A stretch of DNA of 64,000 nucleotides from Mytilus californianus (lineage: Eukaryota). The notes beneath the pieces were generated by a model. That model saw only the letters and a list, made by a program, of their open reading frames with translations, had not been told where the DNA came from and did not search any database. Within the stretch, counting starts at the first letter, position 1; each line of letters begins with the position of its first letter. Position numbers and translations under genes: made by a program. The DNA lies in contig NW_026262723.1 in NCBI RefSeq assembly GCF_021869535.1, positions 51,770,001-51,834,000 of the forward strand, read 5' to 3'. Of this stretch, positions 1 to 63,067 are shown in pieces.

Positions 1-540
1 TAGCAACAGTTGGTAAGTTATAAACTTCAGCTGGGCTATATGACTTATGTTTTGACTCTGGAATTTATTCTCGAATACAGTAAACAGATTGTGGTGTTAC
101 AGAATTAACACTGCCGTATGAGGCTCTCGTGGTTCCTTTAATTAAAGCATTATTCAATAGATTCAGAGACATAAACTGTATAAAAAGTATTGCACCAAAC
201 GTGTGGAAGGCGTTCCTTGACTGTCATAGCTCATTTTTTGTCTCACCAAAAAACACGGAAGGCATTGAAAATCTCTTTATTGTTTTTAACGATAACATAT
301 TTGTTTGAAGAATTGAGAACACAAACCGGTTTTCTTCGAGGGACTTTTTTCATCAGACATCCTTCAATGCATTATTTTAACATGCCAGGGTAAAGAGCTT
401 GAAATAAAAGTTGAGTATATATATGCTACACACAGAATTTAACTTGTAAAAGTATTTCATTATGTAGAGGGTCTGCGGGATTTAGGAATCATTTTACTCA
501 ACAAGCGATTTCTGAAGAAGACGACGATGAAAACGATTAA
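1..540 (+). CDS. Candidate 3' end of an unidentified spliced gene (exons ..12, 88-186, 311-389, 468-540)
   Basis: GTAAGT donor at 13, AG acceptors at 86-87, 309-310 and 466-467, and GT donors at 187 and 390 give phase-compatible joins. The reading is ...ATVDCGVTELTLPYEALVVPLIKALFNRFRDINCIKKLRTQTGFLRGTFFIRHPSMHYFNMPGGSAGFRNHFTQQAISEEDDDEND* (TAA 538-540). The donor at 187 is weak and no homolog was recognised. Confidence 0.35.
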
Positions 541-1831
541 AAAATTGTGCATTTTTATAGGCATGTAGGGTGGTACATTAAAATTGAAATTGTGTTGGCT
601 TGGTCACTCCACTATTGATGGAGTAAGTATAAATAGTCTTAACAGCCTTCCAATCAAAACAAAAACACAACATACATGTGCTTTAAATGTCTCTTCCATT
701 GTATCATGTGACTTTACACATTTAAATATTAAAATAACCTTAACTGACCGGTAAACAAAATTGAATTTCAGTTAAGTTTGTTGTCATGAGATTGTTTAAA
801 TGTCTCATCAAATAACAAAGTATTCTCCATTGTCCAATTTCTATTAGAACAGTACATTATAGGCAAATAAGATCAAAATGAATACAGTATTTTCATTTAG
901 ATTAATACCTTCATATGCTATCAAAATACAATAATTTTATTTTCAGCCATAAAGGTCTTAATCATTGTTATTTCAAAAATTTGTATTTTTCTTATTTTCC
1001 CCAAAATTATTTTTATGCTTTGCTGGTCAGCAGGTGTGCACTTTACAACGAAGGAAATGTTTATTCCGTATGTATTTCTTGATAAAAGATTTCAGGGCCT
1101 CTTTGTTTTGTTGTGAAAGCGACCATGCTAAAAGCATGAAAAGCTTGCTTATAGTCTTATAGAGTATAGAAATATTTATTAAATCAAATAAAGGCAAAAG
1201 ATGTTTCTAAACATTCTTTCAAGGAAACAAAAACATAAAAAAATCTTGTAACAATAACTTTAATTTCCGAAATCATCTTCGAATATATGTTTGTTAACTC
1301 ATAAATTGATTTAAAATCAATAAAGAAAAAGATGAGCATTTTTATAGGTGTCCTTTAATATTTAAATATGCAAAGTCACATGGTACAATGAAACAGACAT
1401 TTTAAGCACATGTATGTTGTTTTTGTTTTGATTGGAAGGCTGTTATTTATATATACTTACTGTTACTCCATCAAGTACTTCCTAAACTAATGAAATTAAC
1501 ACAGAGACCCTAACAGGTAACTTTTTAAATTATAGACCAAAAATTATGAAATTAATAGTCGGAGTTCATAATATGGACATACATCAAGAAAATAAAATAA
1601 TGATTTGAAAAAGTGGATTTTTAAGAATTTTTTCCTGCAAATATATAGAAGTCAAACGGACAATGGTAAGGGATTATCCAATTGTTTAGGTCTACTTACA
1701 GTTCAAAACAAACAAAATCTATAAATGTGTTATAACTGCCACGAAGCACGTTTATCAGCTTGAAAGGACGAATGATTGAAACTGAATAAAAGATGAAAGT
1801 TGAATTTCGAAACAAACAAAAAAATCAAACA

Positions 1832-3434
1832 ATAGTAGATATACGTATACAAAATTTTAAAGAACATTTTACACTTAACAACAACCATAAAAATCCTATT
1901 TCTCGTATCAAACATAAACTAAAAGAACTAGCCAAGGAATTTGTTTTTGTCCCGGCTGATAAAGCTGCTAATAATATCATTATAGTTTGAGGTAAATTTT
2001 ACATTGAGGTTCTGCAAAAGGAAATCACGAATTCACCAAACATTCCAACTGACTTCATTTTCAGAAAACGATATCTGTAACAAACATAAACTATTAGCTA
2101 CTTCTTTACAAGCAGAACCAAATACAATGAAAGTCCGAACTATGTACTGGCTTCCGAAGCTACACAAATCACCTTACAAATATAGATTTATTTCGTCTTC
2201 AAGTCATTGTTCCACTAATAAATTGTCTATTCTACTTACTAGTACACTTGGTACAATAAAAAACCTGATAATAAATTGTTCAAATAAGGCCTTTGAAAAT
2301 AGTGGAATTAATTACTTTTGGAGTGTCAAAAACTCATTGGAAGTACTTGATAAATTACATGCATATATTGGTGATTTTGAATCTGTTCAAAGTTTTGATT
2401 TTTCTACCCTATATACCACTTTGCCTCATATTCTTATTAAGAAACAATTCACACACCTAATTAAATGGGCATTTAAAAAGTCGGAATGCGAATACATATG
2501 TTCAAACTCTTTTAGGTCATTTTTTAGTAGCAACAAACAAAAGAACTATGTCAATTGGACATGCTTTGATACTATATCTGCCCTTGAATTTTTACTTGAT
2601 AACATTTTTGTTCGCTTTGGAGATTCCGTATATCGTCAAGTTATCGGAATTCCAATGGGGACTAACTGTGCACCACTTATTGCGGACCTGTTTTTGTATT
2701 GTTATGAGTTACAATTTATGACTAAAATCAGCAAAGACCCATCGAAACAACATCTGATACAAAAATTTAACAATACTTTTAGATATTTGGATGATATATT
2801 GGCTCTCCATAATGACGACTTCAGTATGTATACTAAAGAAATTTATCCTGTTGAACTTACTTTAAATAAAGCTTATACTAAAAATGACCACTGTCCTTTC
2901 CTCAATCTTGATATCTATATCATTAACGGGAAGCTTAATACAAAAATTTATGATAAAAGAGATGATTTTTCATTTCCTATCGTTAATTATCCATTTTTAG
3001 ATGGTGACGTTCCCTTGTCACCATCTTATGGTGTTTATATATCTCAACTTGTACGATTCGCTCGTGTATGTAACAACGTATTAGATTTTAGCGAGAGAAA
3101 TTTATGTATTACTGAAAAATTATTACACTAGGGTTTTCGATATCATAAACTAGTCAAAACATTTACTAAATTTTATCATCGGTACAAGGACATCATTCGT
3201 AAATATAACTCAACATGCAGACATCTTATACATTCGGGTATTTCACATCCAATCTTTTATGGTAATATTCTTTACAAAGCACAAAAATGTCAGTATTCAC
3301 CTCAAAAGCTAACAAAACCTTTAAACAGACTTATTAAGAAGGGATATAGTTACGATACTGTTGTCAGGTCATTAAAGATTGCATATTTTGGCTTTAATAT
3401 TGATTCACTTATATGGTCTTTGCATCGGAATTAA
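1832..3434 (+). pseudogene. Disrupted PLE reverse transcriptase ORF (putative selenoprotein)
   Basis: In-frame TGA at 1988-1990 (NNIIIV-TGA-GKFYIEVL), a +1 frameshift near 2040 (tcaccaAacattcc) and a TAG at 3129-3131 (probably CAG>TAG). The frame continues GFRYHKLVKTF...LIWSLHRN to TAA at 3432-3434. Confidence 0.85.
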
Positions 3435-3485
3435 ACACATTTATTCTAAAACCAGTTGTTGGCATGACACGGGTTATGTTCTTCT

Positions 3486-3550
3486 CATATATTTTATGAC
3501 GGTATAATACTAAACCCCTAACAGGAGGGATTGTGCCTGATATTCATATG
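3486..3550 (+). promoter_or_regulatory. SECIS element (eukaryotic form 2)
   Basis: ATGA core at 3496-3499 and helix II GGTATAAT (3501-3508)/ATTGTGCC (3530-3537). Unpaired AAA at 3512-3514, apical mini-helix CCCCT/AGGAGGG, 3' core TGAT at 3538-3541, and helix I CATAT (3486-3490)/ATATG (3546-3550). It starts about 50 nt after the RT stop codon. Confidence 0.8.
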
Positions 3551-3746
3551 ATGAAGACATAATCTTTCAATCAGTTTAATTGAGGTCTGGAGCTGGCATG
3601 TCAGTAACTGCTAGTAGTCTGTTGTTATTCATGTATTATTGTCATTTTGTTTATTTTCTTTTGTTTCCTATTCTGACATCGGACTCGGACTTCTCTTATA
3701 CTGAGTTTTACTGTGCGTACTGTTGTGCGTTTGTTTTTACTACATT

Positions 3747-3839
3747 GGCTAGAGGTATAGGGGGAGGGTTGAGATCTAAAAAAAACATGTTTAACCCCGC
3801 CGCATTTTTGCGCCTGTCCCAAGTCAGGAGCCTCTGGCC
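3747..3839 (+). ncRNA. Putative twister ribozyme, P5-type circular permutation
   Basis: P5 GGCTAGAGGT (3747-3756)/GCCTCTGGCC (3830-3839); P2 GGGG (3760-3763)/CCCC (3795-3798); conserved G-A-GGG (3764-3768); U-A-A (3792-3794); GCC (3799-3801); P3 GCA-TTTT-TGC closed by C3801-G3812; P4 CCTG/CAGG with loop TCCCAAGT; T1 CCC/GGG; T2 G3799-U3824 and C3800-G3823. P1 is not Watson-Crick paired. Confidence 0.75.
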
Positions 3840-4576
3840 TTTGTTAGTCTTGTATCATTTTTAATTTCAGTTTCCTGTGTATAATTTGGAGTTTAGTATG
3901 ACGACCATTATCACTGAACTAGTATACATATTTGTTTAGGGGCCAGCTGAAGGACGCCTCCGGGTGCGGGAGTTTCTCGCTGCATTGAAGACCCATTGTG
4001 GCCTTCGGCTGTTGTCTGCTCTATGGTCGGGTCGTTGTCTCTTTGACACATTCCCCATTTCCATTCTCAATTTTAAGTTCGATGTTTACCATTGCAGTAA
4101 GATTGATAATTAATGTTACTATGTGAATATCTATAGCAGCTTCAGAATGATAAAAAAACAAATTCAAATTCAATATAACCTAAAGGCTTTAGCTAATACG
4201 CTTACAAAACAAACGTTTGAATTTCACATATAATTCATTTTATTTGAACATTTAAATTTTAGTTAATTGTAAAGAGCTAGAATAAAATATTGGCTGTGAG
4301 ATAAAATTTAGTTGTAACTCAGATTTTGAATTTATTAATTTGAATCGTAAATAAACAAACTGAAGACAATTCCTCACTTAATTATTACATTATTTACACT
4401 CATACTCATAATAAGGAAATTTATACACTTTTTAACCATTTCATCTACTGTTGTGTCAACTAATGTCTAGTACACAATTTATTAAAATTTCTAAAAAAAA
4501 AAATCAGTCCTCACATAATAAGACTAATCCATAAATTAAATGCCTAAAAAGGAAGTCATCCATTAACTATAAACAT

Positions 4577-4744
4577 CAGTGGCGGATCCAAGGGGGGGGG
4601 GGGGGGGGGGGGGGTCCGTGGGCTGGAACCCCCCCTTTTTTTGGACGATCAATGCATTTGAACAGGGACATATAGTTGGAACCCCCCTTTATCCTGGGTT
4701 AGGACCCCCCCCCCCCCTTTTATAAATGGCTGGATCCGCCCCTG
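4577..4744. mobile_element. MITE with CAGTGGCGGATCCA/TGGATCCGCCCCTG termini and 5-bp TSD
   Basis: Imperfect 14-bp TIR, AACAT duplicated at 4572-4576 and 4745-4749, and internal poly-G and poly-C tracts. Confidence 0.8.
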
Positions 4745-5346
4745 AACATTGCACTGACAATCTGAGACTACTATACTGTGTTAACGTAGTCTCAGTGACA
4801 ATGAAACGAATTCTTGATCAAACACCAATCAAGAGATCATTTGAGCCTTGAGCACTTTACAATATTCTAAATTTATAAGATAATGATAATTCTTTTATTC
4901 ATGATAAGTACTCGCTAACGCTTGTACTTGGATTATCATTCTCTTGCATATATATATACAAAAAAAAAAGAAAAGATGACTGACAATTTATCACCTGACT
5001 TTCGATCAGATTGAATAAAAAAGCAACAGTATTACGTCACCTATCTCTTACCTGAATCAGATAATATAATTATTTTATATGTGTCTGTTCAATTATATAT
5101 CTCTGTTTGAATAAATTAATAAATGATTAGTCTATTGTGGTTTTAATCATCGACGTTGTATCATTGCATGAATTGTTTATGACCTTCGACTGAAAAATGC
5201 AAGCTGTGTTTACCAACGGCATATGTGGTTACAAGTCAAAAGCAACCTTGTTCTTATGAAACATCTCTGTCTGAGGTTAGTGGAGCCTCAACCCTGCCAA
5301 ATTTCTAAATGTCCCAAGTCTGTATTAAGGTCAAGGAACAGTAAAC

Positions 5347-6320
5347 GGGCTATGTCACAGATTTTGCTAAAATTTTGCACACAACCTTGATTCGTTAAAC
5401 TATAAATGATCATAAATGAAAATTGGAAAAATAATGCGTTTATCTCTTTTATTATCTGAAATTTTACTGATTGAATTCTTTCAATATAGGTGATCATTTG
5501 TATAGAAAGCACATAAAATCGACAAAAAAAAACTTCTTACAGTTTTAAAATCATTAAATACATAGATTTTTCTTATAAAACTATATGTTGTTGATACATA
5601 AATTTTCGTTTTAATGATATGAAATAATCATATGGTCACCGACTTTGTTTTTTTTTTGTGTCTAATAATCAATACGTATCTGTTACCTATTTGGTAGTGA
5701 AAAACGTCAAAATTATCGTTTTACGGCCTGCAACGCGATGCATGACGTTACGATTTTTTCACACAGAACACCACTTTGAATAAACGAAGTCGGTGACTCT
5801 ATCATTATTTTACATCATCAAAAAGGAAATTTTATATGTATAAACAACATATAGTTTCAATTCTTCATTATATATTAATTATTTTGAATTTAGCTAAATC
5901 TTTTTCATTATTTTGTTTGAAATCCGTGATAAAAGAAATACGTTTTATGATTTTGAAAGTGAATTATGTCGGGTGTATTTTATTGTTTATGTAATATATC
6001 TGTATTTTGTTAAACTGTTATTATACATGTCACTATAATAAAAAAAAATACTTACTTACTTGCTTACTATAGTTTTTCCATAAAAATCTATGTATTAGAA
6101 GTTAGAGATTTGATGATTTTAAGACAAATTTCAGAATTTTTTTCGCCGATTTTATGTGCTTTGTACACAAATGTTCACCTATCTTGAAAGAATTCAATCA
6201 GTAAAATTTCAGATAATAAAAGAGACAAATGCTTTACTTTTACAATTTACTGTTATAGTTCAATGAGCCAAAGCTGTATCATCCCCCCGGCCAAATTTTA
6301 GCAAATCTGTGACATAGCCC
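5347..6320. mobile_element. Non-autonomous TIR DNA transposon (~975 bp)
   Basis: GGGCTATGTCACAGATTTTGCTAAAATTT at 5347 and the near-perfect reverse complement AAATTTTAGCAAATCTGTGACATAGCCC ending at 6320. Internal IR TCACCGACTTTGTT/AAACGAAGTCGGTGA. No clear TSD. Confidence 0.7.
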
Positions 6321-6708
6321 ATTAATGTAATTTGACCTTAAGTGGTTGCTGTTGGTTGCCGTCTATATCTTTTAATTTCCTGTAGAAAACAATTTTGATT
6401 GATATTTTGCTCGTTCCATGTAAGTCATGATTCATAGTTGCATTAATATAAGATACACAATGATGCACAAACATAACATTTTACACTAAATTGTTATTAC
6501 TGATGAATGGGAGATAACTCAGGATAAATATAGCACAACATTTCTTGTCTTGAAAGTTTTGATATAAGAGTAAATGAGGTATAATATACCGTATATGGAA
6601 GATATCATTATTCCTTACAGTTAATAGATTATACTGTGATAATCATCATGATATCTTGCTATGTAAAAGATTTTACGTGTTTTACAGTATTGTAAAAGTT
6701 ACATACAT

Positions 6709-6965
6709 ATAAAAATAAGGAAATGTGGTATGATTGCCAATGAGACAACTACCCACCAAAGTTCAAATGATGTGAATGTAAGCAATTATAGGCAACCATA
6801 CGGCCCTCAGCAATGAGAAAAACCCATACCGTAAAGTCGACTATAAAAGGCCCCAACATGAAAAATATGAAACAATTCAAGTGAGAAAACTCTGGCTAAC
6901 GGCCTGACCTAATCTGTAACAAAACAATTTACGAAAAACAAGTATGACACAGGTGAACCAACGAC
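6709..6965 (-). mobile_element. Short PLE-type 3'-end derivative (SINE-like)
   Basis: The reverse complement carries the same GTTGTCTCATTGGCAATCATACCACAT terminus as the copies at 16020, 16882 and 62560. Confidence 0.7.
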
Positions 6966-6967
6966 GA

Positions 6968-7030
6968 ATGTAGGACAGAAAGTCACAGGACAAAGGTCAC
7001 AGACAAAAGTCACAGGAAAAAAAGTCACAA
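6968..7030. repeat. Short (G)GACAAAAAGTCACA-type tandem repeat, probable DNA-transposon subterminal array
   Basis: About four degenerate ~15-bp units. Confidence 0.5.
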
Positions 7031-7371
7031 CTCAGTTTTGACATTATTTTTCTTAGAATAAGAAAACACTAATATTTTTAAATGTATTGTTTGTAATTTC
7101 TTGAACTTTTATATATAAAGCAATTTTGTAAACAAAGTTTATTAAAAAAAAAAATCAATAATGATCTAATAATTATTAAAAAAAAAACAATTTGTCGAAG
7201 TGGCTTGGTTCTTAATTGGCTTCATGGTTCCTAGAAATATATCCTTAGCATGATTTAAATTTCATAAATCTTGATTTATCAAGGCTTGTGAACAATTTCC
7301 TTAAAAGTAAAATGAATATATGTAATAAAAAGCAATTATTTCAAGATACTTCTCTCAGTATATATTCAAAC

Positions 7372-7529
7372 CAGAGGCGGATTTAGGGGGGGCAGGGTGC
7401 CCGCCCCCCTTTTTGTGGGAAAAAATTGGTTGATTATTTAGGGACCACTGAAGCATGACTGGAGCGGGCCCCCTCATATGGCAGTCAGTTGCCCCTCCCC
7501 CCCCCCTTTATGACAATTTCTAGATCCGC
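7372..7529. mobile_element. MITE of the CAGRGGCGGAT family (right end decayed)
   Basis: CAGAGGCGGATTTAGG...CTAGATCCGC, with G and C tracts as in 4577-4744. Confidence 0.6.
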
Positions 7530-8344
7530 AGAAATCGACATTATAGATTTTACAGATAAAAGTCTTATAGAAAAATTACATTTGGAATTTTGTAAATTTG
7601 TACTTGGAACCAGAAAGAATGCTTTCAGTTTAGCAGTATGATGAATAATTCAAGGAGATTCTGATCATTAGAACATTATAATAAACAATCTATAATATAT
7701 TTAAAAAGATTTATAAATAAGCTTAACCCAATTTTACAAGAAGCGTATGAGTCAAGTCTGATGGAATATACACTTCGTATACATTTGCCGACAGTATTGT
7801 TTAAATGAAATTAATTTTGATACTAAACAGCTACAACAAAATATAGACGAACAAAATCATTTAAATAATAGGTTCAACAAAATTATAAACAGCTTTATGA
7901 CAGATTAATCTTTAAAATTACTAAATTAGAAAAAACGATGAAGAAAGTGAATGGTTTTTATATAGCAGACTTTAACAAAATTTAAGGGTAGAATATTTTT
8001 TAACTACACAAAATTTTATATGTAGAAAACTGATCACTAAACTCAGAATTAGTGATCACAACTTAGAAATACATCTAGGGGAGACATTCAAATGTTTTAA
8101 TTCACTAGAACCTGAAATGCATGTTTTATTGCATTTTAGATTTAACAGCTTTTTATTGCAGTTAAAAATTAGCGAAGAACTAAGAGATATTTATTTTACC
8201 GTAACTTTAAGTAAACATGAATTTCATTGAGTTATCAGAAAATCAAATGAAAAAAAAAATATGTATTAAATTCATCAACTCTATCTTGAATAAATCAACT
8301 TGGTTCCTATATAAAAAAAAAGCCATTAAAACTTCTTCTTAACG

Positions 8345-9436
8345 ATGGTAAGCCGTTCTCGTCAAAACTATGTTTAAACCATTTTTGAAAAATTTACACA
8401 CTGAGAATTAAAAAAAAAACACAGAGATTACAAAAAATGAAAAACAAACACTGAAAATTGAAAATTACACAATGAGATTTCAAAAAGACACACTGAGATG
8501 AAATAAACTCAAAAACACACTGAGAATTTGAAATTACACACTGAGAATTTAGAATTACACACTGAGATTTGTGCGCACTTTTTTGCGCACATATCTAATT
8601 AGCATACTTAATCTGAATCTATTACAAGCTTAAAACAACTAGGGGACAGAACTCGTTAGTCCTTCAATTTGGCGCTAAATGTTTTATAAAAAACATTAAA
8701 AATACAATGTATAGAAAAACTGCGTTATTAAAGATCAATAGAAAAAGAAAAATACCCATTAATTTACTCTAGAGCTGCAAGAATACAAACAATGCAGAGA
8801 TTTTTCCCCCCAAGTGCCTATTAAAGCATATATAGGTAACAAAAATGTAAAAGATTACCTTATGAAATCAGGGTAACAGTTGAAAGACTTTTGAAAAGGG
8901 ATCATGCTTAAACAGTTTTAAGCAAAAAATCCCGATATACGGTTAGTAATAATCTGAATTATAGGCAACAAACTTATGAATATGAGTTAGCAATAAAAGT
9001 TGTTAAGTCTCGAAATTTATTACGAATGTTAGTTGTAGGAACTGCATTTCATTATGACAAGAGTCCGGGAGACCAAGATATTAATCTGTTGAATTATTCA
9101 TCTCATGAATATTCATTAGTAATTTGCATATTAATCTCAGTGTGTATTTTTGAAATCTCATTGTGTAATTTTAAAACAATTCTCAGAGTGTGTTTTTCAA
9201 TTTATTTCATCTCAATGGGTTTTTTAAAAATATCAGTGTGTAATTTTAAATTCTAAGTGTGTGTTTTTCAATTTTTTAAATCTCAGTGTGTAATTTTAAA
9301 ATCTCAGTGTGTAATTCCGATTTCTCAGTGTGTTATTTTAGGTTCTTAAATCTCAGTGTGATTTTTTTAATTCTCAGTGTGTAATTTTTTCGAAAAAATG
9401 GTTTAAACATAGTTTTGACGAGAACGGCTTGCCATA
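8345..9436. mobile_element. Foldback-type TIR element with subterminal tandem arrays
   Basis: ~40-bp TIR ATGGTAAGCCGTTCTCGTCAAAACTATGTTTAAACCATTTTT and its inverse ending at 9435. Inverted arrays of (A)CACACTGAGAATT units lie on both arms. CTTAACG is duplicated at 8338-8344 and 9437-9443. Confidence 0.85.
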
Positions 9437-45951: not shown

Positions 45952-46121
45952 ATTTTCACTGAACTAGTACACAATTTTATTTAGGGGCCAGCTGAGGACC
46001 ACCTCCGGGTGCGGGATTTTCTCGCTGCGTTGAAGATCCATTGGTGGCCTTCAGCTGTTGTCTGCTCTTTGGTCAGGTTGTTGTCTCTTTGACATATTCC
46101 CTATTTCCATTCTCAATTTTA
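45952..46121 (+). mobile_element. Solo copy of the 3'-terminal ~170 bp of the Naiad-like element
   Basis: Aligns with ~3910-4075: CACTGAACTAGTA...TTTAGGGGCCAGCTGA...CCATTCTCAATTTTA. Confidence 0.9.
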
Positions 46122-49100
46122 TTTTATAGTATCAGATATGTTGATGTTCAATGAGACGATGACATCAGTGAACTTTTACAGCTCCTTAAATGTATTCTGA
46201 CCTTTTTAACATTTGAATGGGAAACTCTTTAAAGGAAAAGTCAGTCTCTGAAAACATATAAATTTTGTTTTTGAATGGTCAGATGAAGAAGAAGTTTTTG
46301 ACAGTCACTTTAAACCGAGTGTGCAGAATAGAATATAATTTTTGAATTCTTGTCAGTTTAGTTGTAAGAAAATCTGATATCTTGTGATTAGTCTGTGGTA
46401 TCCTCTATTGAAATGGACATACACGTGATTGATTTCTGTATCATGGTAAGCATTCTGAATTCTTATTACATTTTATTAAACATTTCTTTACAAATGATAT
46501 ATTCATTGACAGATAAGCTTAAAGTAAAGAATGAACCTAGCTTGCATCAGCAATTCTTTTTAAAGATGCATCTAATATTTCATTTTAATTGATATAACAA
46601 ACATTTTTGCTAAAAATTGTTGGAAAATATTACTTTCAATAAGCCATGACATATCATGTTCAATATGTTATGATAAAGTTAAAAATGTCAGAGAGAAAAG
46701 TTTACTTTTGTTAATATCAGCTTTTTAGAGGTTATTACATAAATTGTTTATATAGATATATAGTTAAAGGTTATTATATTTTTATAAGACTGGTAGCCTA
46801 ACCTTTGCTTTGCCATGATAGATTTCTCCACATCTTGTTGAAATTCTTGACTTGAAAATTCGAATTACAAATTGTACTAAAAATTAAAACCTGTCAAATA
46901 TATATTCATCTATGTAATACTCAGACTGCTTTACTAAAATTTTGGATGCTAAATTTGTGTGAAATCTTCACCTATAATACTAAAAACAGATAATAACAAA
47001 ACACATCATTTTCAGACGTCAATTGATTGAATGCTGGCCAACTTTTATTTTGGGTGTAAACATTTTAAGTCTAATTTACAAATGATAGACAAATCTGTGT
47101 TCCTAATTAAAGATTTATTGTTAAAATTTGAGTCCTAAAAAAATCTTTTGTATGTATGTTTGACTAATTTTAAGAAATTTAATGAATCAATATCTTAAAT
47201 GTTAAGATACCCTTTAACGAACGTTCAAGTGTTGAAGTTAACTTGTCTTCGGTTTTTGAATACTTTGACAGTGAGATCATAATTGTCTGAACTGCATGTA
47301 GCTTGAAATGTTTCACAAAATGAAATTTATACTCTTCATGTGCTTCACTAGGCTGTTAAAGAGAGGAGAAACAAGTCTTATATAAATTAGTCTGAACTTT
47401 GGGATCAACTTTTAAAACAAAGCCTTAATCTTGTTGACTTGATAAATTACAATTAATAATGTAAGTGAGAATGCATAAAGTATGAAACATCGGTTTTTTG
47501 GACCATTTGTTTTTAAATTTCAATAGCTTTAAGGTAAAGGGTGCAGCTGCAGAATTCAAAGTCCTCTTTATTTAAGCCTAAGTTTAGAGCATGATTTTTA
47601 TTTTCAGCTAACAATTTTAAGTAAGACATGCTTATTACTGGAAATTTAGCAACTTATAATCAGTTTGTCTTGAAACAAGAAAGGTCTATGAGAAAGTGCT
47701 TTATTCAGGGTATTGTTCAAGACCTGCATGACTATAGATGATGCTGTTATTTAGATATGATATGGTCAGTAAGGTCAAACTCAATGAGAAGGGAACCCAA
47801 CAACATTATAAAACCAGATGTTTTGATCATGATTACAAGTGTGAATGTTGAGTTCTCAAATACTTGTTTTACCTGTCACAAGCTATTATAAGGTGTCTGT
47901 CTCAGGAACTTTGTCTCTGTCTTTTATCTCTTATAATGTTTTTTTGTCCTTTAAAGAATTCTGGTATTGATGGAAGAAGTTCTGAATCAGTAGTCTCATT
48001 TAAATTTATTCACAACTAAGGATGATTTAGAGATTGACCATTGGTTGACCTCTAGATTTCTTAATGTAGGGTTACTGTCTCATTGGTCTATGTCCTATAT
48101 CTCTTGTTAATCATGTTTAAAGGTCAAAATATAGCATTTAATGATAAACAAGTGGTCATACCATATGTCAAGGCTTAATTACATAAAGTCTACAATGGTG
48201 TTAATGAAATCAACAGAGTCCACCAAATTTAATCTATCAGCCAAGATTAAAAAAAAAAGGGGGGGGGGGGGGGGGCTCAGTAAACTGGGAGAGAAAATGG
48301 ACTACAAATCTAATTTTTGACCAAATTGGACCTTCTGAGCCCCTAGATCATTAACACCAATTAATACAAAAAGAAAATTATACATGATCAGCATACTCCT
48401 CAAGAATTGAGAGGCATTTTACTGTATCCACTCAGCACTAGATAATAAATTAACTTCAATGAATGTACAACAAATGATTAGTAAGTGGTAACATCACATG
48501 TCTTATCTTGATTGTAATGATTGAAGATAATGTCTATCCTAAGGTTGTATTTAATCAAGGTAGATTCTTTGATAAATATATTTTTATTTAAAAATGTTCA
48601 AGCTTCAAAAAGGTTTATATATTGATCTAATAAGATAATCTGATATGCCTGTATACAGTTGTGTTTGCTTGATATATATTCTGTTTTTGAACTTAAATGA
48701 AAGTTTTTTATTTTACCACACGTATAAGATCTCTCACAAATCCACCCTACTTAAAATATAAAACGAATAAAAAAATGATGCTAACATTTCGTATAAAATT
48801 TGAGATGGAAAATGAACCATGCACCCCTCATTAAACATTGTCATTACAGAGACATCACACCCAATCCCCATTGAAACTGACAAAAGAGTGACTCTTCCAA
48901 TAATATAAATACATAGGGTACAGCATAATCAGGCTATCAATACTTTTCATTATTTGCAGATTTTGGGATTTGTGTCAAAAATCTTAGATTGATTCTGTTA
49001 AATTCATTACACTTTTTATGGACTTGAGAATTTAGAGCTTGCCATAATGTATAAACACCTGTCTATTATTTAGACTGTATGTTGCCCTCTACATGTCTTG

Positions 49101-54773: not shown

Positions 54774-55575
54774 TTCAGTATCTATGACAAACGAGACGAT
54801 TTTAATTTTGAAATGATAAATTTCCCCAACCTTAGTAGCAATAAACCAACTTCACCTGCATATGGGATATATATTTACGAACTCATTCAGTATTCAAGAG
54901 CTTGCAGCTGCTACTCAGACTTTGTAATACGTCACCAGTGTCTGAGCAGAAAGGTAATGAACCAGGGTTATGTCAAAGAACGTCTTGTCCTTTTCCTAAA
55001 AAAGTTCATCAGAAGATACCAAGATCTTGTTGATAAATATTCCGTATCAACTTCACAAATAATACACTATGGTCTTGAAGTATAGATTCTAGGTACTGAC
55101 GTTGTTTATCATCTTATTTGTGTGTTGTAGTGTTCTTTTTATTTGTCTTTGTATATTTTTTAACCTTTACTGTTTAGTCCTTTTTTGGTAATATCCTTTT
55201 GGCGTGGCTTGGTATTTATACATCCCTCCATTGTGTTATTGTACTATGGTCATTTTTTTAATTCTTGTCTTTCATTTTTGCATATGTGTTTTGTCTATAG
55301 AGTGTCTATATGCCATTTTGTTTTAATTTATTGACATAGTTGTTTGTTTTTATAGTAATTAAGATTATAACACAATGTTGACTGCTGTACGCCCAGTGAG
55401 AGGTTTAGCTAGCTAAAAAACCATTTGCTACATAACGAAATGCCTGTACCAAGTCAGGAATATGACAGTTGTTTTCCATTCGTTTGATGTGTTTGAGCTT
55501 TTGAATTTGCCATTTGTTAAGGGAATTTACTTTTTGAATTTTCCTTGGAGTTCAGTATTTTTGTAATTTTACTTT
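54774..55575 (+). mobile_element. Second PLE family: RT C-terminal fragment plus 3' UTR
   Basis: IYDKRDDFNFEMINFPNLSSNKPTSPAYGIYIYELIQYSRAC...GLEV* (TAG 55083-55085) is homologous to YDKRDDFSFPIVNYPFLDGDVPLSPSYGVYISQLVRFARVC of the first element. The UTR has a decayed twister-like core. Confidence 0.85.
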
Positions 55576-62559: not shown

Positions 62560-63067
62560 ACATGGTTTTATTATTTGTTGTTATTGGCTTGGAACTTAAG
62601 CTTTCAAGTACTCTCAGATTGGTCTTTAGTGTTTTTGTTAGTTGTTTGATTGCTTTTTATCGATCTGATATGATTTTTTCAATTGATTTTTACAGTTTGT
62701 TCTTATGCTGTGCTGTTGCACCACAGTCCCAGGTTAGTGGGAGGGTTGGGCCACAGTAAATATGCCTGCCATATTCTATATGTGCCTGTTCCTTAGTCAT
62801 TAGCCTGTAATTCAGATGTTGTTGTTTGTTATATATATCATATTTGTTTTTTGTCTGTTGATTTGTACATGAATTAAGCCATTGGTTTTCTCATTTGAAT
62901 TGTTTTAAATTTTGTTATGTGTGGCCTTTTTTAGCTTGCTATCCAATATGGGTTTTGCTCATTGTTGAAGGCTGTAAGGCTATCTATAGTTGCTAACATC
63001 TAAGTCATTGGGTCTCTGGTGGATAGTTGTCTAACTGGCAATCAATACCACATCTCCTTATTTTATA
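62560..63067 (+). mobile_element. Decayed PLE-type 3' UTR (third family) with a twister-like remnant
   Basis: CAGGTTAGTGGGAGGGTTGG...CCTGCC...GCCTGTTCC...AGCCTG, then the TTGCTCATTGTTGAAGGC...GTTGTCT...GGCAATC..ACCACATCT terminus. Confidence 0.65.

What the first reader, a model, noticed from the sequence alone, without database searches (positions are those of the whole stretch)
3747..3839. P5-type twister self-cleaving ribozyme in the 3' UTR/pLTR of a Naiad-like Penelope element
Seen: every twister core element maps in the P5-permuted order. These are the P5 outer stem (10 bp), GGGG-G-A-GGG, U|AA-CCCC-GCC, P3 closed by C-G, and P4 CCTG/CAGG with loop UCCCAAGU, plus both pseudoknots (CCC/GGG and GC/GU). 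Predicted cleavage is between U3792 and A3793, with G3764 and A3793 as the catalytic residues. Established: canonical PLEs use hammerhead ribozymes in their pLTRs, while the Naiad clade was described as lacking canonical hammerheads (recalled from memory). Inference: twister replaces the hammerhead in this lineage. I am not aware of this association being described, but the literature must be checked.
Basis: partly seen in the sequence, partly recalled or inferred. Interest (0 to 1): 0.92.

Follow-up and report, generated by a model that had tools for sequence, protein, structure and literature searches.

The report
Twister ribozyme in Naiad retrotransposons
A self-cutting RNA of the twister class sits in the terminal repeats of Naiad Penelope-like jumping genes, which were thought to carry no ribozyme, and its usual first stem is replaced by two palindromes that suggest it works in pairs.

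Summary
Window 3747-3839 (+) holds every twister core element in P5-permuted order, about 246 nt before the 3' end of a 5'-truncated Naiad copy (1832-4075).

Rfam models do not detect it: no gathering hit, and only a 13-bit partial match. A covariance model built here finds 52 copies in the window and 93 contigs encoding Naiad reverse transcriptases at 31-96% identity. All 52 lie on the RT strand, downstream of the RT or in the upstream pseudo-LTR.

P2, P3, P4, P5 and both pseudoknots show compensatory changes. The catalytic G-A and the A-A after the cleavage site are invariant in all 32 parsed sequences. This is a real, vertically inherited twister-class ribozyme, occupying the place that hammerheads hold in canonical Penelope-like elements.

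Two covarying palindromes replace it. Neither can form a stable hairpin, but each forms a strong self-duplex. I infer a dimeric "double twister", analogous to the dimeric hammerheads of other PLEs.

I found no paper linking twister to PLEs or Naiads. Two other first-reader notes flag the same kind of motif elsewhere in this genome. Cleavage itself is untested.

The parts
1832..4075 (+). 5'-truncated Naiad Penelope-like element copy: RT part, 3' UTR and tail
   Evidence: blastn gives 93.8% identity to L003 1439-3679 over 2249 nt. tblastn RT matches cover 1826-3431. The DKA motif PADKAANN sits at about 1955.
2004..3131 (+). Longest open stretch of the RT, with motifs FSTLYTTLPH, GIPMGTNCAP and RYLDDIL
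   Evidence: There are 6524 homologues, the best at 96% identity.
3747..3756 (+). P5, 5' strand (closing stem of the permuted ribozyme)
   Evidence: Pairs with 3830-3839. The P5 duplex has z = -6.1 against shuffles, and relatives have P5 helices of entirely different sequence.
3760..3763 (+). P2, 3'-side strand (GGGG)
   Evidence: Pairs with 3795-3798. All 4 P2 pairs show changes on both sides across relatives.
3764..3765 (+). G-A of loop L1. G3764 is the predicted general base.
   Evidence: GA is invariant in 32/32 parsed distinct sequences. The position matches published L1 3'_1.
3766..3768 (+). Pseudoknot T1, 5' strand (GGG)
   Evidence: Pairs with CCC 3818-3820. Relatives carry GGG/CCC, AGG/CCU, GGA/UCC, AGA/UCU and GGU/ACC.
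3771..3778 (+). Palindrome 1 (Pal1), damaged in this copy: only AGATCT 3772-3777 remains self-complementary. Close relatives have TGAGATCTCA.
   Evidence: There are 25 distinct longest palindromes (22 of them are Pal1, 3 are Pal2 or AU runs); Fisher combined p = 4e-12.
3783..3792 (+). Palindrome 2 (Pal2), AAACATGTTT, ending on U-1 at the scissile bond
   Evidence: Variants include AAACUAGUUU, AAACCGGUUU and AACC(N)GGUU. In the model-fitted alignment, helix 3 is 85.7% paired and 3 of its 4 pairs change on both sides.
3792..3794 (+). Cleavage site U3792|A3793-A3794. A3793 is the predicted general acid.
   Evidence: AA is invariant and N-1 is U or C. Published twister site is N|A.
3795..3798 (+). 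P2, 5'-side strand (CCCC)
3799..3800 (+). Pseudoknot T2, 5' strand (GC)
   Evidence: Pairs with GT 3823-3824. Relatives carry AC/GU, CC/GG, GC/GU and UC/GG.
3801..3812 (+). P3 hairpin (optional stem)
   Evidence: P3 varies in length from 10 to about 60 nt, is 98% paired, and all 3 scored pairs are compensatory.
3813..3828 (+). P4 (CCTG/CAGG) with the 8-nt loop L4, TCCCAAGT
   Evidence: P4 types include ACCG/CGGU, GCUG/CAGC, GCAG/CUGC and GCCG/CGGC.
3830..3839 (+). P5, 3' strand
3486..3550 (+). SECIS-like element in the 3' UTR, between the ORF end and the ribozyme. It is context, not part of the ribozyme.
   Evidence: Rfam SECIS_1 scores 29.9 bits (gathering score 35), E = 4.6e-4 for the 381-nt stretch.
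54777..55115 (+). Second, strongly truncated Naiad RT fragment from another subfamily
   Evidence: tblastn gives 63% identity to the L051 ORF, residues 915-1009.
55393..55459 (+). Decayed twister of that second copy. The Pal2, cleavage-site and P2 segment is deleted.
   Evidence: R2 scores 31.4 bits, E = 8e-5. Sequence compared with L051.

Best explanation
Window 3747-3839 is a copy of a twister-class self-cleaving ribozyme that is an integral, vertically inherited part of Naiad Penelope-like retrotransposons.

Fold. The RNA is closed by a long P5 stem, so it has type-P5 topology. P2 and P4 form, an optional P3 hairpin is present, and loop L4 docks onto loop L1 through pseudoknot T1 (3 bp) and onto the P2-P3 junction through T2 (2 bp). 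This places G3764 and A3793 at the scissile phosphate.

Reaction (inferred from homology). Cleavage falls between U3792 and A3793 and leaves a 2',3'-cyclic phosphate and a 5'-OH.

Location and role. The ribozyme lies in the repeated terminal region (pseudo-LTR, or every unit of a tandem array). A read-through transcript therefore carries one copy on each side of the ORF. Cutting at both releases a unit-length RNA whose two ends can re-pair through P5 and P2, a form suited to ligation into a circle. This role is inferred, by analogy with what has been proposed for hammerheads in canonical PLEs.

Dimer (inferred). The canonical P1 stem is missing. Two self-complementary segments stand in its place: Pal1 lies 1-3 nt after T1, and Pal2 ends on U-1. 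I infer that two ribozyme copies pair through them, either from two RNAs or from the two pseudo-LTRs of one transcript. The Pal2 duplex would then supply a shared P1-like helix under both active sites.

This copy. The window copy belongs to a dead, 5'-truncated insertion. Its catalytic core is intact, but Pal1 is damaged.
For: Shown by tool results:
- All core elements are at the stated coordinates.
- The window residues match every upper-case position of the Rfam twister-P1 consensus as printed (UAA, GCC, GUCCCAAG, GAGGG), in permuted order.
- Custom model R1 gives 43 hits and R2 gives 52 hits with E down to 1e-17 to 1e-20. All 52 R2 hits at E <= 0.05 are on the RT strand, in 373 kb searched on both strands.
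- 92.9% of cells are paired against 69.6% in shuffles and 32-48% in slid controls. 16 of 19 pairs change on both sides, and 0 of 500 shuffles reach the observed values.
- T1 and T2 covary, and GA and AA are invariant in 32/32 sequences.
- P5 is a 10-18 bp helix of unrelated sequence in each family. 30 of 33 are at least as stable as the best 1% of shuffles, mean z = -4.9.
- 26 of 29 informative loci of the clade with at least 50% RT identity carry the ribozyme, as do 6 of 16 more distant loci. On the RT tree it occurs on both sides of the midpoint root.
- Two copies lie 3541 nt apart in a head-to-tail tandem (L086), and two lie 4181 nt apart in pseudo-LTRs (L012).
- Relatives are Naiads: N-terminal GIY-YIG plus C-terminal RT, the DKA motif and in-frame TGA codons.
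- Palindromes: 25 distinct longest palindromes (22 Pal1), Fisher combined p = 4e-12. Hairpin dG is about 0, against self-duplex dG of -9 to -20 (Pal1) and -3 to -12 kcal/mol (Pal2). L007 and L008 have identical RT stretches and differ in the ribozyme only by the compensatory pair GGCC to GAUC at the centre of Pal1.

From the literature:
- P1 is dispensable for twister cleavage (PMC5408937; PMC11662667).
- Naiads lack canonical hammerheads (PMC8557442).
- PLE hammerheads have a palindromic helix III and act as dimers (PMC4209133 and PMC6765202).
Against: - No cleavage was tested.
- Rfam twister models do not reach threshold anywhere: best scores are 13-20 bits against a gathering score of 67.
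- No intramolecular P1 exists.
- P2 carries a recurrent mismatch in the largest subgroup (GUGU or GAGU against ACCC) and is only 2-3 bp in the L046/L051 group. T1 has a U-U in that same large subgroup.
- The pair counts come from an alignment fitted to the model.
- For the canonical PLE PAc, hammerhead mutants did not affect insertion in vitro, and no RNA-seq reads ended at the ribozyme site (PMC11167929). A processing role is therefore unproven for any PLE ribozyme.
- Seven or eight more distant Naiad loci with enough flank show no twister even with filters off.
- The dimer rests on sequence symmetry alone.
Confidence: 0.8

Rival explanations
1. The motif keeps the twister fold but no longer cleaves. 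On this view it serves as a structured 3'-UTR/pseudo-LTR element, for example a binding or positioning site for the Naiad RT, or an RNA dimerisation domain. The conserved loop nucleotides would then be kept for folding alone.
For: - There is no P1.
- P2 and T1 are imperfect in the largest subgroup.
- PAc hammerhead cleavage is not needed for insertion in vitro.
- The palindromes point to dimerisation as a selected function in its own right.
Against: - The two catalytic residues and A2 are invariant in 32/32 diverged sequences.
- P1-less twisters cleave at near wild-type rate.
- 94% of predicted natural twisters, many with imperfections, were active in the CHiTA assay.
Confidence: 0.12
2. The ribozyme is active as an ordinary monomer, and the two palindromes have another role. 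Candidates are small local hairpins, a DNA-level or cDNA-level signal such as fold-back priming or protein binding, or pairing that regulates an inactive alternative fold.
For: - P1 is dispensable, so nothing has to replace it.
- The plain MFE fold of the window copy pairs GGGUUGAG with UUUAACCC, an alternative to the active fold.
- Some Pal2 variants have an unpaired central nucleotide.
Against: - The central 4 nt of Pal1 are self-complementary in every family (GAUC, GCGC, GGCC, CAUG, UGCA, AGCU, GUAC). A hairpin loop does not need that.
- Isolated hairpins have dG of about 0.
- A protein site would not change sequence this freely.
Confidence: 0.3
3. The twister is a separate hitch-hiking element, such as a retrozyme-like or SINE-like parasite that inserted into some Naiad 3' UTRs, and is not part of the Naiad itself.
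For: - Craig et al. raise the idea that hammerheads may simply parasitise PLEs.
- The twister is undetected in several Naiad lineages.
Against: - The position is fixed: 614-633 nt after the RT match end in 20 of the 26 carrier loci of the clade with at least 50% RT identity, and up to 1200 nt in the others.
- It is always in the sense strand.
- Ribozyme subtypes follow the RT clades.
- It is present in 26 of 29 informative loci of the main clade.
Confidence: 0.05
4. The match is a chance resemblance in AT-rich repeat DNA.
For: There is no Rfam hit at gathering score. The octamer GTCCCAAG alone occurs twice in the window, as expected by chance.
Against:: dozens of diverged copies with compensatory changes in seven paired elements.
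Confidence: 0.01

Closest known systems
Type-P5 twister ribozymes (Roth et al. 2014; Rfam clan CL00120, twister-P1/P3/P5)
   Same: P2, P4 and the optional P3 are present. The ends lie in P5. Pseudoknots T1 (3 bp) and T2 (2 bp) form. The conserved N|A-A and G-A of L1 and the U-CCC-AAG-N of L4 are all there, with the same predicted cleavage site and catalytic residues.
   Different: There is no P1 hairpin; two tandem palindromes take its place. Rfam models score it far below threshold. P5 is unusually long at 10-18 bp.
Mini-twister (engineered, P1 deleted; Kosutic et al. 2015, as reviewed in PMC5408937)
   Same: It shows that a twister core without P1 cleaves at almost the wild-type rate. The Naiad RNA is a natural P1-less core.
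   Different: Mini-twister is an artificial bimolecular construct. The Naiad form keeps 17-25 nt with two conserved palindromes where P1 would be.
T-variant twisters at the 5' end of Perere-3 (RTE-type non-LTR) retrotransposons of Schistosoma mansoni (PMC8501958)
   Same: These are also twister variants that are integral to a retrotransposon, with an unconventional P1.
   Different: They sit at the 5' end of a non-LTR element, part of P1 comes from the target-site duplication, and their role is 5' processing and translation. The Naiad ribozyme is in the pseudo-LTR of a PLE, has type-P5 topology, and has palindromes instead of P1.
Minimal, dimeric hammerhead ribozymes in the pseudo-LTRs of canonical Penelope-like elements (Cervera & de la Pena 2014, PMC4209133; Lunse et al. 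2017)
   Same: The genomic niche is the same: the pseudo-LTR of a PLE, with one copy per tandem unit. The helix next to the cleavage site is replaced by a short palindrome, which implies action as a dimer.
   Different: It is an unrelated ribozyme class with a different fold and core. The Naiad RNA has two palindromes, not one.
Retrozymes (plant LTR and animal non-LTR retrozymes with hammerheads)
   Same: Ribozymes in direct repeats cut out a unit-length RNA that can be circularised.
   Different: Retrozymes are non-autonomous and use hammerheads. Here the element is autonomous (EN plus RT) and the ribozyme is a twister. No circular RNA has been shown.

Membership tests
twister ribozyme | P2 helix flanking loop L1 | tested here: met
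   GGGG/CCCC in the window. GUGU/ACAC, GGGA/UCCC, GGGC/GCCC, GGGU/ACCC, GUGG/CCAC and GAGU/ACUC occur in relatives. All 4 pairs are compensatory and 90% of cells are paired. One subgroup has a recurrent mismatch.
twister ribozyme | P4 helix closed by the 8-nt loop L4 | tested here: met
   CCUG/CAGG with loop UCCCAAGU. Five other P4 pair types occur, and 98% of cells are paired.
twister ribozyme | Pseudoknot T1 (L1 3' strand with L4, 3 bp) | tested here: met
   GGG/CCC, AGG/CCU, GGA/UCC, AGA/UCU, GGU/ACC and GGU/GCC. The largest subgroup has 2 bp plus a U-U.
twister ribozyme | Pseudoknot T2 (junction after P2 with L4, 2 bp) | tested here: met
   GC/GU, AC/GU, CC/GG and UC/GG. 30 of 32 sequences are fully paired.
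twister ribozyme | Strongly conserved nucleotides of L1 and L4 (N|A-A; G-A; U...AAG) | tested here: met
   GA is invariant in 32/32 and AA in 32/32. The L4 pattern U-NNN-AA-G-N is kept in 29 of 32. The window matches every upper-case residue of the Rfam consensus as printed.
twister ribozyme | P1 helix adjoining the cleavage site (one of the three 'essential' stems of the consensus) | tested here: not met
   The strand after GGG is not complementary to the strand before U|AA in any family. Two self-complementary segments are found instead. P1 is known to be dispensable for catalysis.
twister ribozyme | Type-P5 permutation: ends in a P5 stem between P4 and P2 | tested here: met
   10 bp in the window. 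It is 10-18 bp in 30 of 33 distinct copies, with unrelated sequences.
twister ribozyme | Score at or above the Rfam gathering threshold (RF03160 / RF02684 / twister-P3) | tested here: not met
   No gathering hit in the window or in 20 loci. The best sub-threshold scores are 13.3 and 20.3 bits against 67.2.
twister ribozyme | Site-specific self-cleavage giving a 2',3'-cyclic phosphate and a 5'-OH | not testable with these tools
   Needs an in vitro transcription and cleavage assay, or end-mapping in host RNA.
Naiad clade of Penelope-like elements | N-terminal GIY-YIG endonuclease followed by a C-terminal RT in one ORF | tested here: met
   Met in relatives: L051 and L046 have intact ORFs of 1019 and 1007 aa, with GIY-YIG at about residues 139-230 (25.9 and 22.6 bits, cutoff 22.6) and RVT_1 at about 740-870. 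The window copy is 5'-truncated and keeps only the RT part.
Naiad clade of Penelope-like elements | DKA variant of the DKG motif, and a CxC motif in the linker | tested here: met
   PADKA is present in the window and in 60 loci. SCNCS lies in the L004 ORF upstream of the DKA motif. Both motifs are as described in PMC8557442.
Naiad clade of Penelope-like elements | Pseudo-LTRs or partial tandem organisation | tested here: met
   L012 has a direct repeat of about 240 nt at a spacing of 4181. L086 is a full head-to-tail tandem at a spacing of about 3400-3541.
Naiad clade of Penelope-like elements | No canonical hammerhead ribozyme | tested here: met
   No Rfam hammerhead hit in the window or in 27 loci, at gathering score or at E <= 2-5.
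dimeric ('double') ribozymes of PLEs and viroid-like RNAs | The helix next to the cleavage site is replaced by a self-complementary segment, so that two copies must pair | tested here: inconclusive
   Self-complementarity and its covariation are shown. Dependence of cleavage on dimerisation is not testable here.

The most novel reading that the evidence does not exclude
Naiad retrotransposons carry a natural dimeric 'double twister'. Two ribozyme copies, either the two pseudo-LTR copies of one read-through transcript or copies on two RNAs, pair through two covarying palindromes.

The Pal2 self-duplex, which ends on U-1 at both of its ends, would serve as one shared P1 helix under two active sites. 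The Pal1 self-duplex would bridge the two cores. Cleavage, and possibly re-ligation to a circular template, would then be licensed only in multimeric RNA.

This would be a second, independent invention of the dimer-gated ribozyme logic already seen in the hammerheads of the other Penelope-like clades. It would also argue that self-cleavage is a required step of the PLE life cycle and not a hitch-hiker.
Probability: 0.45. Interest if true: 0.88.

Novelty: new variant of a known kind. Interest (0 to 1): 0.8.

Why it matters
Penelope-like elements are the third great class of eukaryotic retrotransposons and the closest relatives of telomerase. What their ribozymes do is unknown.

[quoted passage not shown] They were reported to lack hammerheads, and that absence was used to argue that PLE ribozymes may be dispensable parasites (PMC8557442). 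Finding an unrelated ribozyme class in the same position of Naiads reverses that argument. Two different catalytic RNAs recruited to the same niche point to selection for self-cleavage itself.

The finding also:
- gives a large natural family of P1-less, type-P5 twisters that current Rfam models miss;
- offers the first sequence-level case for a dimeric twister;
- provides a concrete set of constructs for testing what PLE ribozymes are for.

Tried and rejected
- Rfam at gathering score on the window and on 20 loci found nothing. E-value scans gave only partial twister-P1 matches and no other ribozyme class.
- The second GTCCCAAG at 5311 is a chance match with no twister context.
- There are no direct repeats of the ribozyme within 1-9000, so this copy has no upstream pseudo-LTR inside the window. 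It is 5'-truncated.
- Pfam on the window RT fragment gave no RT hit. Identity came instead from motifs, homologues and intact relatives.
- I looked for an intramolecular P1 in all families and found none.
- Whole-ribozyme cofolding of two copies was uninformative, because any hairpin RNA gives domain-swapped dimers. I used only the isolated palindromes.
- R1's weak window hits at 62734-62802 and 47836-47907 were not recovered by the better model R2. I treat them as chance or heavily decayed.
- The viral contig scan found no relatives.
- A filters-off search of 11 twister-less Naiad loci found nothing.
- The apparent absence in L027 is not informative. A strong hairpin followed by a T-run, resembling a bacterial intrinsic terminator, lies 578 nt after the RT match, so the contig may be chimeric.
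- I could not settle the P2 register of the L046/L051/L047 subgroup.
Full report
**1. The observation**

Read from the sequence, window 3747-3839 (+) contains the following, in order:
- P5, 5' strand: GGCTAGAGGT
- linker: ATA
- P2, 3'-side strand: GGGG
- G-A
- T1: GGG
- a 23-nt segment
- T|AA, the cleavage site
- P2, 5'-side strand: CCCC
- T2: GC
- a P3 hairpin: C-GCATTTTTGC-G
- P4: CCTG
- loop L4: TCCCAAGT
- P4: CAGG
- A
- P5, 3' strand: GCCTCTGGCC

The plain fold is more stable than every one of 200 shuffles (z = -3.6).

Rfam 15 gives no hit at gathering score in the whole window. A permissive scan of 301 nt returns only a 13.3-bit partial match of the twister-P1 model to P3/P4. That alignment, and a 20-bit one in a relative, print the Rfam consensus: UAA, P2, GCC, P3, G, then GUCCCAAG inside P4, then P2', GAGGG and P1'. 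The window matches every upper-case position of this consensus, in circularly permuted order.

**2. Context**

The window copy spans 1832-4075. It is 93.8% identical to metagenome contig L003 from that contig's position 1439 onward, so it is a 5'-truncated insertion. The ribozyme lies about 246 nt before its 3' end.

The ORF at 2004-3131 is an RT with 6524 homologues. It carries the PADKA (DKA) motif. Close relatives have a CxC motif upstream.

When TGA is read through, relatives have a single ORF of about 1000-1080 codons with 2-6 in-frame TGAs. Lineages without TGA (L051, L046) encode an N-terminal GIY-YIG domain at or just above the Pfam cutoff, plus a C-terminal RT.

This is the permuted Naiad architecture of Craig et al. 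2021. That paper also describes selenoprotein Naiads in clams and states that Naiads lack canonical hammerheads despite relaxed searches (PMC8557442).

**3. Comparative evidence**

I fetched 80 metagenome loci, 11 loci from mis-binned or contaminated prokaryotic assemblies, and 2 single contigs. All encode Naiad RTs at 31-96% identity.

- *Model hits.* A covariance model of the core (R1: P2, P3 and P4 only, 8 seed sequences) found 43 hits. A second model that also included the palindromes (R2) found 52 hits at E <= 0.05, the best at 1e-17. Every R2 hit is on the RT strand, although both strands of 373 kb were searched.
- *Position and frequency.* In 20 of the 26 carrier loci with at least 50% RT identity to the window, the hit starts 614-633 nt past the end of the RT match. 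In the other six it starts at 680-1200 nt. 26 of the 29 loci in this clade that extend at least 700 nt past the RT carry it. The three exceptions are broken copies or a possibly chimeric contig: L068, L081, and L027, which has a strong hairpin plus T-run there.
- *More distant Naiads.* 6 of 16 informative loci carry it. Seven or eight do not, even with filters off. No other Rfam ribozyme was seen in them.
- *Phylogeny.* On an RT tree the ribozyme occurs on both sides of the midpoint root, and its subtypes follow the RT clades. It is therefore old and vertically inherited, with some losses or undetected divergence.
- *Repeat structure.* Two copies lie 3541 nt apart in the head-to-tail tandem of L086. 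Two lie 4181 nt apart in the roughly 240-nt direct repeats that flank the ORF in L012. L013 and L046 show the upstream copy 400-600 nt before the ORF. This is the pseudo-LTR position that hammerheads occupy in canonical PLEs.

**4. Structure**

*Pair counts.* On the model-derived alignment, 92.9% of cells form standard pairs. Column shuffles give 69.6%, and sliding the partners by 1-3 columns gives 32-48%. 16 of 19 pairs show changes on both sides, and 0 of 500 shuffles reach any observed measure. The alignment was fitted to the model, so I added analyses that do not depend on it.

*Parse by fixed offsets*:
- P2 types: GGGG/CCCC, GUGU/ACAC, GGGA/UCCC, GGGC/GCCC, GGGU/ACCC, GUGG/CCAC, GAGU/ACUC.
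- P4 types: CCUG/CAGG, ACCG/CGGU, ACUG/CAGU, GCUG/CAGC, GCAG/CUGC, GCCG/CGGC.
- T1 types: GGG/CCC, AGG/CCU, GGA/UCC, AGA/UCU, GGU/ACC.
- T2 types: GC/GU, AC/GU, CC/GG, UC/GG.
- The G-A of L1 and the A-A after the scissile bond are invariant in 32 of 32 distinct sequences. N-1 is U, or sometimes C.

*P5.* It is a 10-18 bp helix of unrelated sequence in each family. 30 of 33 are at least as stable as the best 1% of shuffles.

*Weak points.* The largest subgroup has a recurrent mismatch in P2 and a U-U in T1. The L046/L051/L047 subgroup has only 2-3 P2 pairs, and I could not settle its register.

**5.

In no family is the strand after T1 complementary to the strand before U-1. The intervening 17-25 nt always has the same layout:
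- U or UU.
- A perfectly self-complementary Pal1 of 6-10 nt. Examples are UGAGAUCUCA, UGGGAUCCCA, UGGGCCCA, UGGAUCCA, GCAGCUGC, GUAGCGCUAC, UGGCAUGCCA, ACGCGCGU, UGAGUACUCA, GGGGCCCC, GGGCGCCC, UGUGCGCACA, GGUGCACC and UAGCUAGCUA.
- An A-rich spacer.
- A second self-complementary Pal2 that ends at or on U-1. Examples are AAACAUGUUU, AAACUAGUUU, AAACCGGUUU, AAACGUUU, AACC-N-GGUU and AAGUC-A-GACUU.

An alignment-free test of the longest palindrome against composition-preserving shuffles gives Fisher combined p = 4e-12 over the 25 distinct longest palindromes, 22 of which are Pal1. It gives p = 1e-4 for Pal2. In the pair counts, all 4 Pal1 pairs and 3 of 4 Pal2 pairs change on both sides.

L007 and L008 have identical RT stretches. 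They differ in the ribozyme only by GGCC to GAUC at the centre of Pal1.

As isolated strands the palindromes cannot form stable hairpins (dG about 0). Their self-duplexes are -9 to -20 kcal/mol for Pal1 and -3 to -12 kcal/mol for Pal2. A hairpin would not need a self-complementary centre, and a protein-binding site would not vary this freely.

I therefore infer pairing between two ribozyme copies. Topologically, the Pal2 duplex presents a 3'-terminal U-1 at each of its two ends, so it can act as one shared P1-like helix under two cores. The Pal1 duplex links T1 of each core to the partner strand that completes that helix. This model is inference; nothing here tests it.

It parallels the minimal hammerheads of canonical PLEs, whose helix III is reduced to a palindrome and which cleave as dimers. 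In the window copy Pal1 is damaged: relatives have CTCA[C/T]AAA where the window has CTAAAAAAAA, which leaves only AGATCT self-complementary.

**6. Function**

*Shown:* the ribozyme-like fold is conserved, it lies in the sense strand, and there is one copy per repeat unit.

*Inferred:*
- It self-cleaves.
- Cutting at both copies of a read-through transcript releases a unit-length RNA.
- The ends of that RNA can re-associate through P5 and P2.
- The RNA may then be circularised, and may template more-than-unit-length cDNA. This has been proposed for PLE hammerheads and retrozymes.

*Caution:* for the Poseidon element PAc, reverse transcription starts internally, hammerhead mutants did not affect insertion in vitro, and no reads ended at the ribozyme site. 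The role of any PLE ribozyme is still open.

**7. Novelty**

Full-text searches found no paper linking twister to PLEs or Naiads. The queries were 'twister' with 'Penelope-like', 'PLEs', 'Naiad', 'pLTR' and 'GIY-YIG'.

Known relatives of the idea:
- Twister T-variants at the 5' end of Perere-3 in Schistosoma.
- A remark about truncated twisters in RTE elements.
- Twisters predicted in bivalves, with no stated context.
- The engineered P1-less mini-twister.

The only dimer mentioned for twister is a crystal artefact. The library does not cover most subscription journals.

Two other first-reader notes in this genome flag the same kind of motif in other windows. They are unchecked.

**8. Verdict**

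This is a real twister-class ribozyme, conserved in Naiad pseudo-LTRs. I class it as a new variant of a known kind: P1-less, palindrome-bearing and missed by Rfam. The association with Naiads is apparently undescribed. The window copy itself is a decayed relic with an intact catalytic core.

Noticed in passing
window 1988-1990 (TGA in ...NNIIIV*GKFY); the same position in L001, L003-L005, L007, L009, L011-L034, L036, L038, L040, L048 and L081: There is an in-frame TGA exactly where other Naiad lineages have Cys (PADKAxNNxxx[V/I]-C/TGA-[RK]xxY). Read through, the ORFs are about 1000-1080 codons long with 2-6 TGAs. This fits the selenoprotein Naiads reported in clams and spiders (PMC8557442), but at an RT-proximal Cys position and in many lineages.
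   Followed up: partly
window 3486-3550 (+); also L075 1044-1106: SECIS-like element in the 3' UTR, between the ORF end and the twister. Rfam SECIS_1 scores 29.9 bits in the window (gathering 35; E = 4.6e-4 for the 381-nt stretch) and 23.3 bits in L075.
   Followed up: partly
window 54777-55115 and 55393-55459 (+): A second, strongly truncated Naiad copy of a different subfamily (63% identity to L051). Its twister has lost the Pal2, cleavage-site and P2 segment by deletion.
   Followed up: yes
window 45952-46125 (+): A solo fragment about 84-88% identical to the last ~150 nt (tail) of the Naiad family at 3947-4075. It may be an extremely 5'-truncated insertion or a pseudo-LTR remnant.
   Followed up: no
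L083-L086, L092 (assembly CBDDTI01, labelled 'MAG: bacterium'); L088/L089 (SUP05 isolate CRYPA); L093 (Bathymodiolus septemdierum symbiont MAG); L087 (Paenibacillus tengchongensis assembly); L090 (1.6-Mb contig of a 'bacterium' MAG): Prokaryotic genome records contain animal Naiad retrotransposons, including tandem arrays. This points to host-DNA contamination or mis-binning of eukaryotic contigs.
   Followed up: no
L043 about 30-70 and L045 about 250-300 (+), upstream of the ORF: Naiad lineages without a detectable twister share a conserved hairpin (GGCACUGAGGGUAUCAGUGCC) in the upstream region. Its function is unknown, and no Rfam ribozyme matches it.
   Followed up: no
L027 4590-4675: A strong hairpin followed by a T-run, resembling a bacterial intrinsic terminator (weak Phe_leader match), lies 578 nt after the Naiad RT. 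The contig may be chimeric, which would explain the apparent absence of the twister there.
   Followed up: partly
window 8392-8571 (+): Degenerate tandem repeat with a 21/48-nt period (ACACACTGAGAATT-like units) in AT-rich DNA, unrelated to the finding.
   Followed up: no
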